Source of the DNA: Dimorphilus gyrociliatus
Lineage: Eukaryota > Animalia > Annelida
Length of the DNA stretch: 64,000 bases
Assembly (NCBI GenBank): GCA_904063045.1
Contig: CAJFCJ010000007.1
Span: 3,169,404 to 3,233,403 of the forward strand
Direction: 5' to 3'
Below are positions 2,823 to 48,748 of the stretch, piece after piece. The stretch's first letter is position 1; every line of letters starts with the position of its first letter. The position numbers and the translations under genes were made by a program. The notes under the pieces were generated by a model. That model searched no databases, was not told where the DNA came from, and saw only the letters and a list, made by a program, of their open reading frames with translations.

Positions 2823-4684
2823 ATGAAAACAAATGATGATGAGGGATATGTGATTCGCGTCCGTGGTCTGCCATGGTCAGCTACAGAGGACGATGTTCGG
2901 AATTTCTTTGAAGGTACGGTATTCAAAAAAAATGCTTAATCAACTTTTACCTTGATGCCTTGACGATCGATACAGATGCCGCCTGCGATATCACAGAAAA
3001 TGGTATCCATTTCACATATGTCAGAGACGGCCGTCCATCGGGAGAGTGTTATATTGAATTCACTAATGAAGATAGCCTGAATAAAGCCTTAGCAAAGGAT
3101 AAGGAACACTTAGGAAAAAGATATGTCGAGATATTCAAATCTAAGAGGCAAGAAATGGAATGGGTTGTTAAAAGATCTGGACTTTCAGGACAACAAGGAG
3201 CAGACGCTGTAGTTAGATTACGTGGACTGCCGTTCGGTTGTTCTAAAGAAGAAATTGCTCACTTTTTTAGCGGTTCGTAACTTTCCAAGTCTTCCATGTG
3301 AACTTAACAAATAGCTTTAAATATGTTTAATGTGGGCTTTATTTTTCGGGCAATAAAGGGTTGGAAATCGTTCCAAATGGGATAACTCTTCTACACGATG
3401 GGCAGGGTCGATCAACAGGGGACGGATATGTACAGTTCGCATCAGCATCTCTCGCTGAACAAGCTCTCTCTAAACATACGGAAACAATCGGGCACAGGTG
3501 GGGGGTGAAAACCATCGGTCGTCATTATATTAGACAAAAACTTTTTTATCTTAAGTTTACAATTACTAGCCAATGTAAATAGCAAAATAATTCTTATTTA
3601 TAATTAATAAACCTAAAGATAAATGGCTGCTAGTAGTCTTGAACAGATAAAAAATATTTGTCAATATTGGAAGACCTCAGTAAATGTCTTGTTCAATCGG
3701 TTATTTCTATTCTGTTAATACGATGTGATGTATACTAGATTTTTTTACCATATATTTGTATACATCTGTATGTGTCTTTTGAAATTTTTATGTCTAATTT
3801 TCTGTTTTTATCAAGAGTGGGTGGGTATGGGTAAATTGGGTGAGGAGGTGACTTTCTAAAAGTCTTTTAAATTCTTTGCTTATTAATATTCAACTTGTTA
3901 AAATGCAGATATATCGAAATCTTCAAAAGCTCTTTAGTTGAACTTCGAAGCGTTTTGAACAGTCATAATCGAAGGACTCAACCAGGATTCCGCCCTGGTC
4001 CTTATGATCGTAATGAACGATATTCTGGTAGGTGTATCAAACTTAAAAAGTGGCGGAGATTCAATGACAAAATTGATTATCTAGGTTATGGGGGTGGAAG
4101 AGGCGGAGGGGGAGGAAGGCGAAATGTTAGAGGTTTCAATGAGGAATACGATGATTATTATGAATATGGTAGATCCAGACGACAACCCGGTGGTGGTTAC
4201 GGTGGAGGACGGAATAAAAATTGTAAGAGTTAAAAGTATGATAATTATAGAGATATTTAAAACCCTTGTCTTCTCCATAGATTATAATAATAGAGGTGGA
4301 TCAGGTGATTATACTAGTTCCACTGGACACAGTGTCCACATGCGAGGCCTGCCTTTCTCAGCAACCGAAGAGGATATTATGCATTTCTTTAGACCTTCAC
4401 AACCTATCAAAATCACAATCCACTACAATGCTGATGGAAGAGCTTCTGGAGAAGCAGATGTTGACTTTGCTTCTCATCATGAAGCAGAGGAATCTTTAAG
4501 AAAGGATCGTGCTGCAATGCAGCATCGGTATATAGAACTTTTCCTGAAGTCTACTCCTGGAGGAAGACCCCAACACAATCCTCCTTATTCTGGTGATCAT
4601 CATTCCGGGGTTGGTCCAATGCAAAACTTTGCAGCTTCTAATCAAGTTGGAACAATGGGTAACCCGAATTACACTCCTTTTTGA
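2823..4684 (+). CDS. HNRNPH1: hnRNP H/F family protein with 3 quasi-RRMs and a Gly/Tyr/Arg-rich linker
   Basis: Exons 2823-2913, 2976-3272, 3359-3497, 3909-4027, 4085-4222 and 4281-4684 are phase-compatible GT-AG. Motifs: [64 protein letters not shown]. Confidence 0.95.
3819..3840 (+). promoter_or_regulatory. Intronic G-quadruplex / G-tract cluster, a candidate hnRNP H/F binding element
   Basis: GGG-T-GGG-TAT-GGG-TAAATT-GGG fits the G3N1-7 x4 pattern. It lies in an otherwise very AT-rich 411-nt intron of the hnRNP H gene. Confidence 0.7.
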
Positions 4685-46059: not shown

Positions 46060-48748
46060 ATGCCTGGACGAAGTAGGAGCCCCTCGGAGGGAAGGGATCG
46101 AGGAGATACTCAAGATGAACGTCGACGTAAGCGATCTAGAAGTAAGGAAAGGCGACGAAGAAGTCGTTCAAAAGAGCGAAGAAGAAGTCGCTCAAATTCA
46201 AAAGAACGAAGAAACCGCAGAGGCTCCAGGGACCGGTCACGAGAGAGAAAACGAAGACGTTCTCGATCCCGGTCACCTACTCGACGCCGGCGAAGTCGAT
46301 CAAGAAGTAATGAACGACGTAAACGACGTAGAAGTAGATCATTAAGCGATGACCGTAAGGCTACAGAAAACGGTGCTGAGAAAGACTCAAAAAATAAAGA
46401 AGAACATAAAGAAGAAAAGGAAGTTAAGGAGGAAAAAGAAAAAAGAGTTCCACTATCTTTAGAAGAAATATTAGAAAAGAAAAAAGCTGAGGAAGCAGCT
46501 CTTAGTAAAGTAATTACAAGTATTATAAAATAAGTCTAGGTAATTAACTATAATATTGCTTTTTTACAGCCAAAGTTTCTTTCGAAAGAGGAAAGAACCA
46601 AACTAGCCTTACAGAAAAGACAATTAGAAGTAGAGACTCAAAGAGCAGCGCAAGAAGAGGCACGTAAAAAGCATCATGCTTTTTTACAAGAAGCCAAATA
46701 CGGCGCAGGTAAATTACCAAATTTTTTTACGATTTCTATGATCTTGATATAATCGGTTAAAAATTTACAGAGGATAACTTTGAAAGAGAAAGACGTGAAA
46801 GAAGGGAAAGACGGGATAGGGAACGCGAACGCGAACGGGAACGTGAACGGGACCGAGATCGGGATAGGGATCGGGATCGCGACAGAGATAGAAACCGTAC
46901 GAAAGTCCCTCATGCTGATATCGTTGAAGGAGGAAATGTCAAAGATCAAGAAAAAGCCTTTGATGCTATAAAAGTATGTGATATTTTATTCCTTTTTAAA
47001 TGATGAGATGGTTAATTAAAGATGTTTGTTTTTCCTAGGAAAGATATCTTGGTCAAATAAGAAAAAAGAAAAAAGTTCGTCGTTTGAATGACAGAAAATT
47101 TTTATTTGATTGGGATCAGGGAGAAGATACATCAACTGATTATAATCCTATATATAAGGCCAAACATCAAGTTCAGTTTTTTGGTAGAGGAAGTTTAGCA
47201 GGAATAGATTTAAAGTCTCAAAAAAAAGAGCAAGGAAAATTTTATGGTGAACTTTTAGAGAAACGCCGAACAATTGAAGAGAAAGATCAGGAAAGTATAA
47301 GACTAAATAATATTGCCAAGAAAGAAGCTAAATTGAAATGGGATGAACGCCATTGGTCTGAAAAGCCTTTGGATGAGATGACTGATAGAGATTGGAGAAT
47401 ATTTAAAGAAGATTTTGCAATATCTTGTAAAGGAGGCAGTATTCCTAAACCGATAAGAAATTGGAAAGAGGCTGACATTAGGGATGCTTTGATTACTGTT
47501 ATAAATAAAATAGGATATAAGGAGCCAACACCTATTCAGAGACAAGCCATTGCTATTGGTTTACAAAATAGAGATATTATAGGTGTGGCAGAAACAGGTT
47601 CAGGAAAAACCGCTGCGTTTCTCATACCCTTGCTGCAATGGATCGAATCTTTACCAAAAATCGAAAGAATGGAAGACGCTGATCAGGGTCCCTATGCAAT
47701 TATTCTTGCTCCAACTCGTGAATTAGCCCAGCAGATAGAAGAGGAAACTTTGAAGTTTGGTGGTCCTTTGGGAATTCGTACTGTAGCCATTATCGGTGGT
47801 ATATCCAGAGAAGAACAGGGATTTAAATTACGACAAGGCTGTGAGATCGTTATTGCTACACCCGGGCGTCTGATCGATGTTCTCGAAAACCGATATCTTG
47901 TTTTAAGTCGATGTACCTACGTCGTTATGGACGAAGCTGACAGAATGATTGATATGGGTTTTGAACCTGAAGTTCAAAAGATCTTGGAATATTTACCCGT
48001 TACTAATCAAAAACCAGATACAGACGATGCGGAAGATGTCCAAAAGTTGATGGAGAATTTTTACACCAAATCTAAATATAGACAAACCGTTATGTTCACA
48101 GCTACTATGCCTCCGGCAGTAGAACGTCTTGCTCGCACTTACCTAAGGCGACCAGCCATTGTTTATATAGGTTCAGCAGGTAAACCTACTGAACGAGTCA
48201 AACAAATAGTGCACTTAATATCTGAGCAAGAAAAACGTAAAAAGTTATTGGCAATTCTTGATGAAGGTATCGAACCACCTATTATTATTTTTGTCAATCA
48301 AAAGAAGGGTGCTGACGTTCTTGCTAAGTCTCTAGAGAAGATGGGATATTTAGCTTGCACGTTGCACGGAGGAAAAGGTCAAGAACAAAGAGAATACGCT
48401 TTAGCCTCACTTAAGGGTGGACACAAACATATTTTAGTGGCTACAGACGTTGCCGGAAGAGGTATTGACATTAAGGACGTTTCACTTGTCATCAATTACG
48501 ATATGGCTAAGTCGATCGAAGATTATACACATAGAATAGGAAGAACAGGCAGAGCTGGTAAAGAGGGAACTGCAGTGACCTTTTTAACAAAAGATGACTC
48601 TACAGTTTTCTACGAATTGAAACAGTGTATTTTGGAGTCTCCAGTATCGAATTGTCCGCCAGAATTAGCTAACCACCCAGACGCACAGCACAAGCCTGGA
48701 ATTGTCGTGACAAAGAAAAGACGTGAAGAAACAGTTTATATATGTTGA
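46060..48748 (+). CDS. DDX23: U5 snRNP DEAD-box helicase DDX23/Prp28 with N-terminal RS and RE/RD repeats
   Basis: [55 protein letters not shown]. Confidence 0.97.

What the first reader, a model, noticed from the sequence alone, without database searches (positions are those of the whole stretch)
3790..3850. Intronic G-quadruplex overlapping a cryptic poison exon in the hnRNP H gene
Seen in sequence: the intron 3498-3908 is 411 nt, about 6 times the local norm. It contains a textbook 3' splice site: CTAAT branch-like element at 3794, a pyrimidine tract, and AG at 3814-3815. This is followed immediately by four GGG runs (3819-3840). Using this acceptor gives R-V-G-G-Y-G-stop (TAA 3832-3834). 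Three donors follow: GTAAAT at 3831 gives a 15-nt in-frame microexon that inserts 5 residues into the qRRM2 HRYIE motif; GTGAGG at 3840 gives a 24-nt stop-containing exon; GTGACT lies at 3848. Inference: this is a second, G4-gated autoregulatory exon read by the gene's own product, likely unannotated.
Basis: partly seen in the sequence, partly recalled or inferred. Interest (0 to 1): 0.8.

Follow-up and report, generated by a model that had tools for sequence, protein, structure and literature searches.

The report
Conserved G-run cluster in hnRNP H intron
A long intron of the G-run-binding splicing factor hnRNP H gene in a tiny marine worm holds a conserved G-run cluster, probably a docking site for the gene's own protein; the proposed hidden "poison exon" and G-quadruplex gate are not supported by the data I could reach.

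Summary
The window is Dimorphilus gyrociliatus (annelid) and the gene is DgyrCDS6410, an hnRNP H/F homologue. Intron 3498-3908 is 411 nt; the gene's other introns are 57-86 nt and the species median is 66. GGG runs at 3819, 3823, 3829 and 3838 form the only canonical G4 motif on either strand of the 64 kb window (0.01 expected).

A sister lineage (about 89% exon identity) keeps the core AGAGTGGG[T/A]GGGTATGG. It sits at the same distance from the 3' splice site, inside otherwise unalignable intron (0 of 200 shuffles score as well).

That lineage has lost the third GGG, so the canonical G4 is not conserved. Assembled RNA contigs of two runs of a related lineage show only junction 3497->3909. 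None of 193 homologues has an insertion at HR^YIE. The splice-site scores are ordinary.

Orthologous introns in Capitella, Lingula, Batillaria and a mite are also long and G-run-rich on the sense strand.

Best reading: a self-binding G-tract element belonging to the hnRNP H exon-skipping/NMD feedback loop, which this scan already reported on this same window (s1-080758). A poison exon remains possible (about 0.2).

The same intron also holds a conserved 160-nt hairpin.

The parts
2823..4684 (+). Coding region of the hnRNP H/F homologue DgyrCDS6410. It has six exons: 2823-2913, 2976-3272, 3359-3497, 3909-4027, 4085-4222 and 4281-4684.
   Evidence: RNA contig joints. tblastn of P0084 (CAD5117657.1) gives 100% identity to exons 1, 2 and 6. 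RRM_1 hits on the exons.
3359..3497 (+). Exon 3, 139 nt, not a multiple of 3. It is ultraconserved and corresponds to human HNRNPH1 exon 4, whose skipping leads to NMD.
   Evidence: 99% nucleotide identity to the relative L002, against 86-91% for the other exons. 1 difference in 140 nt in the X2/X5 RNA contigs. Human exon coordinates span 139 nt (PMC13001508).
3498..3908 (+). Intron 3, 411 nt, phase 2, splitting H-R|Y-I-E of qRRM2.
   Evidence: Joint 'skips 411 GT..AG' in X2 and X5. The orthologous intron is 437 nt in L002 and 765-1410 nt in four other invertebrates.
3498..3520 (+). Donor GTGGGGGG with its conserved flank, at the end of a 100% conserved block that starts at about 3322.
   Evidence: Alignment A1 and sliding identity. 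A GTGGG donor is also present in Lingula and Batillaria.
3517..3676 (+). Conserved long intronic RNA hairpin: 38 base pairs with a variable apical loop.
   Evidence: Folding z-scores are -4.06 (window) and -3.18 (L002). All 38 consensus pairs are kept, 2 of them by one-sided G.U/A-U changes, and none is broken. 13 of 15 differences fall on unpaired columns, hypergeometric P = 5e-7.
3677..3696 (+). Perfectly conserved single-stranded stretch just after the hairpin, containing a 5'-splice-site-like TCA|GTAAAT at 3680.
   Evidence: 100% identity in A1. Donor matrix score 4.2 bits, against 4.8-7.0 for the gene's real donors.
3709..3726 (+). Conserved 18-mer TTCTGTTAATACGATGTG (branch-point-like TTAAT), followed by a conserved TAG at 3736-3738.
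   Evidence: 17 of 18 positions identical to L002; the best 18-mer in 100 shuffles matched at most 16.
3794..3815 (+).
   Evidence: Sequence. TTTTCTGT and the AG are conserved in L002 (AAG against TAG) but CTAAT is not. The acceptor score is unexceptional.
3814..3830 (+). Conserved G-tract core AGAGTGGG[T/A]GGGTATGG.
   Evidence: 16 of 17 positions identical to L002. It is the best conserved segment of the 3' variable part of the intron: 31.0 bits against 14.9 +/- 1.8 in shuffles, 0 of 200 as good. It is unique in the window. It lies 90 nt (window) and 91 nt (L002) from the 3' splice site.
3819..3840 (+). Canonical G-quadruplex motif G3-T-G3-TAT-G3-TAAATT-G3, specific to this lineage.
   Evidence: Only such motif in 64 kb, with 0.01 expected. 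ViennaRNA with the G-quadruplex option places a 3-tetrad G4 in the minimum-energy fold (-19.5 against -13.3 kcal/mol locally) but predicts none for L002.
3816..3839 (+). Hypothetical 24-nt stop-containing cryptic exon (TAA 3832-3834). Alternative ends are 3824 (9 nt), 3830 (15 nt) and 3847 (32 nt). Use is unverified.
   Evidence: In-silico translation. In L002 the AG, the GTATGG site and the GT aligned with 3840 are kept, and an in-frame TGA falls at the same codon. No RNA contig supports the exon.
3909..4027 (+). Exon 4, beginning with the Y-I-E-I-F strand of qRRM2.
   Evidence: Joints; translation.

Best explanation
The four GGG runs at 3819-3840 are a conserved, multivalent G-tract element on the sense strand of the pre-mRNA. 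I read it as an intronic splicing-regulatory site that binds the gene's own product, an hnRNP H/F protein whose three quasi-RRMs each recognise a G-tract.

The element lies in the long intron directly downstream of the ultraconserved 139-nt exon. Skipping that exon shifts the frame, and in human HNRNPH1 this is the basis of an NMD-coupled negative feedback loop driven by poly-G binding.

Most likely the cluster acts together with the G-runs upstream of exon 3 (3334, 3348) and at its donor (GTGGGGGG, 3498-3505). When hnRNP H is abundant, cooperative binding across these sites changes how exon 3 and intron 3 are defined. My preferred version is looping-out and skipping of exon 3; I am unsure of the direction of the effect.

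In the reference lineage the runs also happen to satisfy the canonical RNA G4 motif. That could modulate access to the site, but it is not the conserved feature.

Shown: the motif, its rarity, its conservation in sequence and position in a sister lineage, and the G-run richness of the orthologous introns. Inferred: binding by hnRNP H and the effect on splicing.
For: 1. The gene encodes an hnRNP H/F homologue, with the GHRYIE motif intact.
2. The cluster is the only canonical G4 motif and the tightest group of four G-runs in 64 kb, with 0.01 expected.
3. The core AGAGTGGGNGGGTATGG is 16/17 identical in a lineage whose neutral introns are only 44-73% identical. It is the best conserved segment of the 3' variable part of the intron (31 bits against 14.9 +/- 1.8; 0 of 200 shuffles). 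It keeps its distance from the 3' splice site: 90-71 nt in the window and 91-69 nt in the relative.
4. Intron 3 has 5 G-runs and 0 C-runs in both Dimorphilus lineages. The orthologous intron is long and richer in G-runs than C-runs in four other species: Capitella 765 nt (14 G / 6 C), Lingula 1410 nt (18/10), Batillaria 891 nt (9/3) and Galendromus 898 nt (16/9). In Lingula it is both the longest and the most G-run-dense intron of the gene.
5. Human HNRNPH1 binds poly-G motifs flanking the orthologous 139-nt exon and limits its own level by exon skipping and NMD (10.1101/686956; PMC13001508). Clustered G-runs and RNA G4s are reported to mediate cooperative HNRNPH binding (PMC13001508 abstract).
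6. Exon 3 and its flanks are 99-100% conserved at the nucleotide level, as expected for a regulated switch exon.
Against: - There are no binding data (CLIP or in vitro) for this species.
- No exon-3-skipped or other alternative isoform was seen in the contigs I laid. Contigs drop rare forms, and no raw reads were available.
- Only one relative's intron could be compared.
- In Lingula, Batillaria and the mite, the G-runs concentrate in the first 100-330 nt after the donor. In Dimorphilus the cluster is 320 nt downstream, near the 3' end. Only Capitella has a comparable distal cluster.
- The conserved AG, the TTTTCTGT tract and the GTATGG inside the island fit an exon as well as a binding site.
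- A DNA-level role for a GGGTGGG (GT-box-like) motif is not excluded.
Confidence: 0.5

Rival explanations
1. One reading: the island is a cryptic poison exon or microexon. The acceptor is at 3815|3816 and the donor at 3825, 3831, 3840 or 3848. With donor 3840 the 24-nt exon brings TAA 3832-3834 into frame and sends the mRNA to NMD. The G-runs, folded as an RNA G4 or coated by hnRNP H, mask or expose its splice sites, as in mammalian RBM3 exon 3a.
For: - The AG is conserved (AAG in the window, TAG in the relative), and so is the upstream TTTTCTGT.
- GTATGG at 3825 is perfectly conserved. The GT aligned with 3840 is kept (GTGAGG against GTATGG).
- An in-frame stop falls at codon 7 in both lineages (TAA and TGA).
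- The cryptic donors lie 61-84 nt from the 3' splice site in the window. In L002 the first GTATGG lies 85 nt from it and the second about 67 nt (my count on alignment A1). These are typical intron lengths for a species that splices short introns best (PMC7854359).
- GTAAAT at 3831 scores 6.5 bits, in the top 4.5% of all GTs.
- There is a precedent: RNA G4s at the splice sites of the RBM3 poison exon mask them, and HNRNPH1 represses that exon (PMC12446472; PMC10350819).
Against: - Only junction 3497->3909 is seen, in X2 and X5. Nothing maps inside the intron.
- Donors 3831 and 3848 are lost in the relative, and so is the canonical G4.
- The acceptor score is matched by 21-29% of all AGs. Donors 3825, 3840 and 3848 are matched by 43-46% of all GTs.
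- GT dinucleotides arise automatically from GGGU repeats, and stop codons are frequent in AT-rich sequence.
- No homologue has an insertion at HR^YIE (0 of 193), which argues against the in-frame 9-nt and 15-nt readings.
- An exon of 9-32 nt is very small.
- If hnRNP H silences the exon, as it does in RBM3, the feedback would be positive rather than homeostatic.
Confidence: 0.2
2. The G4 structure itself is the functional unit, acting as a potassium- or temperature-sensitive RNA switch or a DNA G4 that affects transcription. hnRNP H binding would be secondary.
For: - The canonical motif has short loops of 1, 3 and 6 nt.
- ViennaRNA places a G4 in the minimum-energy fold, favoured by 6 kcal/mol locally.
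- It is the only such motif in 64 kb.
- Extended 4xGGG clusters (loops up to 12 nt) occur in the orthologous intron of Capitella (two) and Batillaria (one).
Against: - The sister lineage has only three GGG runs, and no G4 is predicted for it.
- In the context of the whole intron the G4 fold is favoured by only 0.8 kcal/mol over a duplex fold.
- Lingula and Galendromus have many G-runs in this intron but no intronic 4xGGG cluster with loops up to 12 nt.
Confidence: 0.1
3. The island is a DNA-level element, for example a GT-box/CACCC-type transcription-factor site inside an intronic enhancer. That would also explain why the intron is long.
For: [quoted passage not shown]
- GGGTGGG resembles KLF/Sp-type sites (my own knowledge, not tested here).
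- The same 11-mer, GAGTGGGTGGG, occurs in the Capitella orthologous intron.
Against: - There is a strong strand asymmetry: 5 G-runs against 0 C-runs in both Dimorphilus introns, and G exceeds C in all four outgroups. This points to an RNA-level signal.
- The rest of the intron's conservation is explained by an RNA hairpin whose substitutions avoid paired positions.
- The gene's own product is a G-tract RNA binder.
Confidence: 0.08
4. It is a chance cluster with no function. The apparent conservation would reflect shared ancestry and alignment luck.
For: Only one relative is available. The third G-run has already decayed there, and the flanks are fast-evolving.
Against: - 0.01 such motifs are expected per window.
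- 0 of 200 shuffles reach the conservation score.
- The neutral introns of the same gene are 44-73% identical.
- The position relative to the 3' splice site is kept, although the sequence in between is about 49% identical.
Confidence: 0.1

Closest known systems
Human HNRNPH1 exon 4 autoregulatory switch (poly-G motifs flanking a 139-nt exon; skipping leads to frameshift and NMD)
   Same: The gene family and the exon size (139 nt) are the same. G-runs lie at and around the exon's splice sites. A long downstream intron carries further G-runs, and the protein binds G-tracts.
   Different: The human sites described lie within or immediately next to exon 4. Here the cluster lies 320 nt downstream, 70-90 nt before the next exon. 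Neither binding nor feedback has been shown in the annelid.
RBM3 exon 3a: a poison exon whose splice sites are masked by RNA G-quadruplexes and which HNRNPH1 represses
   Same: Four G-runs lie directly next to a candidate 3' splice site and overlap candidate 5' splice sites of a stop-containing exon inside an intron. hnRNP H is the likely reader (PMC12446472; PMC10350819).
   Different: RBM3 exon 3a is an experimentally verified, NMD-sensitive exon with G-runs conserved across mammals.
Intronic G-triplet / G-run splicing enhancers bound by hnRNP F/H
   Same: Sense-strand GGG repeats lie near the ends of an intron. In the looping model, sites at both ends of a long intron help its removal. Here there is a G6 run at the donor and a cluster near the 3' end.
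   Different: That literature concerns vertebrate genes in general. Here the element is in the hnRNP H gene itself, in a genome whose spliceosome is tuned to about 66-nt introns.
Ultraconserved poison exons of SR-protein and hnRNP genes
   Same: The logic is homeostatic control of a splicing factor through unproductive splicing (PMC11791180 abstract).
   Different: Those exons and their flanks are conserved over hundreds of nucleotides. Here only a 17-nt core is conserved, and the proposed exon body is essentially the binding motif itself.

Membership tests
hnRNP H/F (quasi-RRM) protein family - the host gene | Three RRM-type domains of the qRRM subtype with the conserved GHRY[IV]E[IV]F strand, and closest relatives named hnRNP H/F/H3/GRSF1. 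| tested here: met
   RRM_1 hits on exons 1, 2, 3 and 6. Homologues carry PF00076, PF28441 (RRM_11) and PF28442 and are named hnRNP H/F/H3. P0084 contains ...TETIGHRYIEIFK.
HNRNPH1-type exon-skipping/NMD feedback switch | A 139-nt frame-shifting exon encoding the end of qRRM2, flanked by G-runs. | tested here: met
   Exon 3359-3497 is 139 nt. G-runs lie at 3334, 3348 and 3500. The human exon spans 139 nt by the coordinates quoted in PMC13001508.
HNRNPH1-type exon-skipping/NMD feedback switch | The skipped isoform exists, is NMD-sensitive, and responds to the protein's level. | not testable with these tools
   Only assembled contigs could be laid, and no skipped form was seen.
Canonical RNA G-quadruplex motif | Four runs of at least 3 G separated by loops of 1-7 nt on the transcribed strand. 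| tested here: met
   GGGTGGGTATGGGTAAATTGGG at 3819-3840 on the + (sense) strand. ViennaRNA with the G-quadruplex option puts a G4 in the minimum-energy fold.
Canonical RNA G-quadruplex motif | The four G-runs are conserved in the orthologous intron.
   The relative L001/L002 reads GGGAGGGTATGGATGAAAATTAGGG, with three GGG runs. No G4 is predicted for it.
Canonical RNA G-quadruplex motif | Folding that depends on K+ in vitro or in vivo. | not testable with these tools
   Needs circular dichroism, RT-stop or rG4-seq.
Poison (NMD-targeting) cassette exon | Both splice sites are used in vivo, shown by junction reads. | tested here: inconclusive
   Contigs from 4 runs show only 3497->3909, and only in X2 and X5, which belong to a related lineage. 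Contigs cannot show rare forms.
Poison (NMD-targeting) cassette exon | An in-frame premature stop (or frameshift) upstream of at least one further exon junction. | tested here: met
   TAA at 3832-3834 is in frame from acceptor 3816, and three exon junctions follow. This is an in-silico result only.
Poison (NMD-targeting) cassette exon | Splice sites and exon are conserved in relatives. | tested here: inconclusive
   The AG, the GTATGG at 3825 and the GT at 3840 are kept. GTAAAT at 3831 and GTGACT at 3848 are lost. The CTAAT branch site is not kept.
In-frame coding microexon (9 or 15 nt) in qRRM2 | Homologues or isoforms carry an insertion between GHR and YIE. | tested here: not met
   0 insertions among 303 retrieved homologues, 193 of which have the canonical motif. 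The 15-nt donor is lost in the relative.
Known RNA families (Rfam), e.g. an intron-hosted snoRNA | A covariance-model match in the intron. | tested here: not met
   Only one chance-level hit (E = 2.3), on the opposite strand at 3903-3991.

The most novel reading that the evidence does not exclude
The conserved island could be a real, G-tract-embedded micro or poison exon of the annelid hnRNP H gene. Its inclusion would be set by hnRNP H occupancy and, in the reference lineage, by RNA G4 folding. That would be a second unproductive-splicing device in the same intron as the ancient exon-skipping switch. It might work together with the conserved 160-nt hairpin and the nested intron-like unit 3680-3738.
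Probability: 0.17. Interest if true: 0.65.

Novelty: new member of a known kind. Interest (0 to 1): 0.4.

Why it matters
hnRNP H/F proteins control many G-run-dependent splicing events, and in humans they limit their own level through a poly-G-flanked, NMD-coupled exon.

Dimorphilus has introns of about 66 nt, yet it keeps a 411-nt intron here. That intron contains a conserved distal G-tract cluster and a structurally constrained hairpin. This suggests the autoregulatory module is larger than the exon-flanking G-runs, and it is compact enough in this worm to dissect by mutagenesis.

If the cryptic exon were real, it would be a case of a splicing factor gating a poison exon in its own gene through its own binding motif or an RNA G4. 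As the evidence stands, the finding mainly extends a known circuit to a new clade and marks specific elements to test.

Tried and rejected
1. Junction evidence. The single read-laying run covered X1, X2, X3 and X5, all stored as assembled contigs. It gave only the canonical joints. The reference lineage itself (X1, X3) has no contig across intron 3. This is absence of evidence, not a refutation.
2. More relatives' DNA. A metagenome scan with a 26-mer from the ultraconserved exon 3 found nothing. P0002 and P0003 turned out to be spliced transcripts. Dreissena, Limulus and Paramuricea proteins were not on record.
3. Truncated isoforms. A word search with residues 1-177 of P0084 found no Dimorphilus protein. 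Truncated '...IGHRWG...' products from other animals read through the GTGGG donor, which concerns the neighbouring finding rather than this exon.
4. Intron-hosted ncRNA. Rfam found nothing credible.
5. Opposite-strand gene. Only short ORFs of chance length overlap the intron.
6. Repeat or transposon origin. The island is unique in the window and the local repeats are trivial.
7. Splice-site matrix. The ORF-bridging training set (68 introns) is noisy and discriminates poorly. I use it only to show that the candidate sites are not exceptional.
8. In-frame 15-nt or 9-nt microexon as a coding isoform. Rejected as unlikely.
9. Hypothetical isoform proteins (exons 1-3 joined to the cryptic-exon tail).

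Full report
IDENTITY AND GENE MODEL

The window is AT-rich (about 32% GC). A protein of Dimorphilus gyrociliatus, DgyrCDS6410 / CAD5117657.1 (P0084, 395 aa), matches window exons 1, 2 and 6 at 100% and exon 3 at 98%. The window is therefore from this miniature annelid.

The exons give RRM_1 hits. The homologues are named hnRNP H, F, H3 or GRSF1 and carry PF00076, PF28441 and PF28442.

RNA contig joints fix the model:
- Exons: 2823-2913, 2976-3272, 3359-3497, 3909-4027, 4085-4222, 4281-4684.
- Introns: 62, 86, 411, 57 and 58 nt.

The published median intron length for the species is 66 bp, and its splicing is most efficient on short introns (PMC7854359). It splits H-R|Y-I-E of the second quasi-RRM.

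THE OBSERVATION

A further GTATGG lies at 3825.

The motif G3-N1-G3-N3-G3-N6-G3 is the only canonical G4 motif on either strand of the 64 kb window. First-order Markov simulations give 0.01 per window. No other group of four G-runs is as tight. ViennaRNA with G-quadruplex energies places a three-tetrad G4 in the minimum-energy fold: -19.5 against -13.3 kcal/mol for 3790-3870, but only -81.9 against -81.1 for the whole intron.

RNA EVIDENCE

The look-up of sequencing runs returned only runs kept as contigs. I laid four of them.
- X1 and X3 are 95-100% identical to the window (X1 at 99% or more). They cover other junctions but not intron 3.
- X2 and X5 belong to a relative with about 94% exon identity. 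They show the joint 3497->3909 and nothing inside the intron.

Contigs drop rare variants, so this does not exclude a low-level NMD isoform, but it gives the exon no support. The protein collection holds no truncated or insertion isoform of this protein.

COMPARATIVE EVIDENCE, CLOSE RANGE

Three Logan DNA contigs (L001-L003) carry the orthologous gene of a more divergent lineage. Its exons are 86-91% identical, and it shares only 15 of 38 X2/X5 variants, so it is a third lineage. Its neutral introns 1, 4 and 5 are 73%, 44% and 59% identical. Its intron 3 is 437 nt.

The alignment shows:
(a) A block of about 200 nt (3322-3520) that is essentially 100% conserved and includes exon 3 and the GTGGGGGG donor. 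This is the subject of the earlier finding s1-080758 on this same window.
(b) A 91% conserved block at 3628-3696 with a perfect 40-nt core.
(c) A 17/18 conserved 18-mer at 3709-3726.
(d) The G island AGAGTGGG[T/A]GGGTATGG at 3814-3830, 16/17 identical, set in sequence that is only 30-50% identical.

With composition-weighted scoring, the island is the best conserved segment of the 3' variable part of the intron: 31.0 bits against 14.9 +/- 1.8 in shuffles, with a maximum of 21 in 200 shuffles. Its distance to the 3' splice site is kept, at 90-71 nt against 91-69 nt.

However, the relative reads GGGAGGGTATGGATGAAAATTAGGG. The third run is GGA, so the canonical G4 is lost, and no G4 is predicted for it.

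Of the candidate splice signals:
- Kept: the AG (AAG against TAG), the TTTTCTGT tract, GTATGG at 3825, and the GT aligned with 3840 (GTGAGG against GTATGG).
- Lost: CTAAT, GTAAAT at 3831 and GTGACT at 3848.

An in-frame stop falls at codon 7 in both lineages (TAA and TGA). Stops are common in AT-rich sequence, so this carries little weight.

COMPARATIVE EVIDENCE, LONG RANGE

The orthologous, same-phase intron is also long and G-run-rich on the sense strand in four other species:

| Species | Intron length | G-runs / C-runs |
|---|---|---|
| Capitella teleta | 765 nt | 14 / 6 |
| Lingula anatina | 1410 nt | 18 / 10 |
| Batillaria attramentaria | 891 nt | 9 / 3 |
| Galendromus occidentalis (mite) | 898 nt | 16 / 9 |

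In Lingula it is the longest intron of the gene and the densest in G-runs.

Most of these runs lie in the first 100-330 nt after the donor. Only Capitella has a second cluster near the 3' end. With loops of up to 12 nt, Capitella has two 4xGGG clusters and Batillaria one.

A long, G-run-rich intron after the 139-nt exon is therefore an old feature. A distal cluster at a fixed 70-90 nt from the acceptor is, so far, specific to Dimorphilus.

SPLICE-SITE STRENGTH

A matrix trained on 68 ORF-bridging short introns of the window is noisy. Under it:
- Acceptors 3815 and 3817 score 3.8 and 4.4 bits. The gene's real acceptors score 0.2-5.5, and 21-29% of all AGs score as well.
- Donor 3831 scores 6.5 bits, in the top 4.5% of all GTs.
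- Donors 3825, 3840 and 3848 score about 3 bits, matched by 43-46% of all GTs.

GGGU repeats necessarily create GT dinucleotides. The sites are usable but not distinctive.

No homologue carries an insertion between GHR and YIE (0 of 193 with the motif). The in-frame 9-nt and 15-nt microexon readings are therefore unlikely to be coding isoforms.

INTERPRETATION

Human HNRNPH1 binds poly-G motifs around the orthologous 139-nt exon 4. Skipping of that exon gives an NMD substrate, and intronic poly-G mutations relieve this negative feedback (10.1101/686956; PMC13001508). G-run clusters and RNA G4s are reported to mediate cooperative HNRNPH binding (PMC13001508 abstract).

The most economical reading is that 3814-3840 is a multivalent G-tract site for the gene's own protein and belongs to that circuit (confidence about 0.5). 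I favour cooperative binding with the runs at 3334, 3348 and 3500, which would loop out exon 3. Helping removal of an over-long intron is equally compatible with the data. The direction of the effect is inferred, not shown.

The conserved AG and GT sites keep it alive, as do the 61-84-nt spacing of the window's cryptic donors from the 3' splice site and the similar spacing (about 67 and 85 nt) in the relative. It has no RNA support, though, and half of its parts are not conserved (about 0.2). The remaining alternatives are less likely: the G4 as the primary functional unit (0.1), a DNA-level enhancer (0.08) and chance (0.1).

OTHER CONTENT OF THE INTRON

Positions 3517-3676 fold into a long hairpin in both lineages.
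- Folding z-scores are -4.06 and -3.18.
- All 38 consensus pairs are kept. Two change one-sidedly between G.U and A-U, and none is broken.
- 13 of 15 differences in the stem span fall on unpaired columns (hypergeometric P = 5e-7).
- The apical loop is only 47% identical and carries a 14-nt indel.

One caveat applies: the structure was predicted from these same two sequences.

The hairpin buries a candidate acceptor (AG 3645-3646) and a 33-nt stretch that would read R-stop. It is followed by a perfectly conserved, unpaired TCA|GTAAAT at 3680. Together with the conserved TTAAT-containing 18-mer and the TAG at 3736-3738, this outlines a nested intron-like unit of 59 nt (62 nt in the relative, by my count on alignment A1). 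These elements account for much of the intron's extra length. They may matter more than the G4, but none of them is verified at the RNA level.

STEPS LEFT OUT AND LIMITS

The full-length protein was used only by reference (P0084).
- The exact look-up of hypothetical isoform proteins (exons 1-3 plus the cryptic-exon tail) was left out under the operators' rule.
- Only one relative's intron was available.
- All read evidence comes from assembled contigs.

VERDICT

There is a real, conserved, probably self-binding G-tract element, but the G4 is not conserved and the poison exon is unproven.
- Novelty: a new member of a known kind, namely hnRNP H poly-G autoregulation.
- Interest: 0.4.

Noticed in passing
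window 3517-3676 (L002 2025-2177): A conserved intronic RNA hairpin of about 160 nt. All 38 pairs are kept in two lineages. 13 of 15 differences fall on unpaired columns (P = 5e-7). The apical loop is variable and carries a 14-nt indel. Folding z-scores are -4.06 and -3.18. There is no Rfam match.
   Followed up: partly
window 3645-3738: A candidate 33-nt stop-containing exon (acceptor AG 3645-3646, exon 3647-3679 reading R-stop) lies inside the 3' arm of the hairpin. It is followed by a perfectly conserved GTAAAT at 3680, a conserved TTAAT-containing 18-mer (3709-3726) and a conserved TAG (3736-3738). Together these form a nested intron-like unit of 59 nt (62 nt in the relative). It could also serve as an alternative downstream donor for exon 3. 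No RNA evidence.
   Followed up: partly
window 3322-3520: About 200 nt are essentially 100% identical between lineages whose other exons differ by 9-14%. The block covers the last 37 nt of intron 2, all of exon 3 and the first 23 nt of intron 3. This matches the earlier finding s1-080758.
   Followed up: partly
window 3245-3387 (run X2, record 4): A 144-nt contig (depth 10.8 against about 41 for the spliced form) runs unspliced through intron 2 with a single mismatch. It may be intron-2-retaining RNA, or DNA carried into the library; the run's RNA status is only a guess.
   Followed up: no
proteins P0085, P0093, P0096, P0172, P0177 (other animals): Truncated hnRNP H products end in ...IGHRWG..., meaning they read through the conserved AG|GTGGG donor. 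One is an NCBI-annotated Biomphalaria isoform of 184 aa. This suggests that retention or downstream-donor use in this intron is widespread.
   Followed up: no
L006 1951-1961 (Capitella orthologous intron): The 11-mer GAGTGGGTGGG is identical to window 3815-3825, inside a Capitella G-run cluster 88-118 nt after the donor. This may be motif convergence rather than homology.
   Followed up: no
window 4085-4120: Exon 5 (Gly/Arg/Tyr-rich coding region) has the highest G4Hunter score in the window, 2.16 at 4090. Four of the regions scoring above 1.2 lie in this one 2-kb gene.
   Followed up: no
window 46800-46880: The second-tightest group of G-runs lies in an Arg/Asp/Glu-rich (RD/RE-type) coding repeat. 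It is unrelated to this finding.
   Followed up: no
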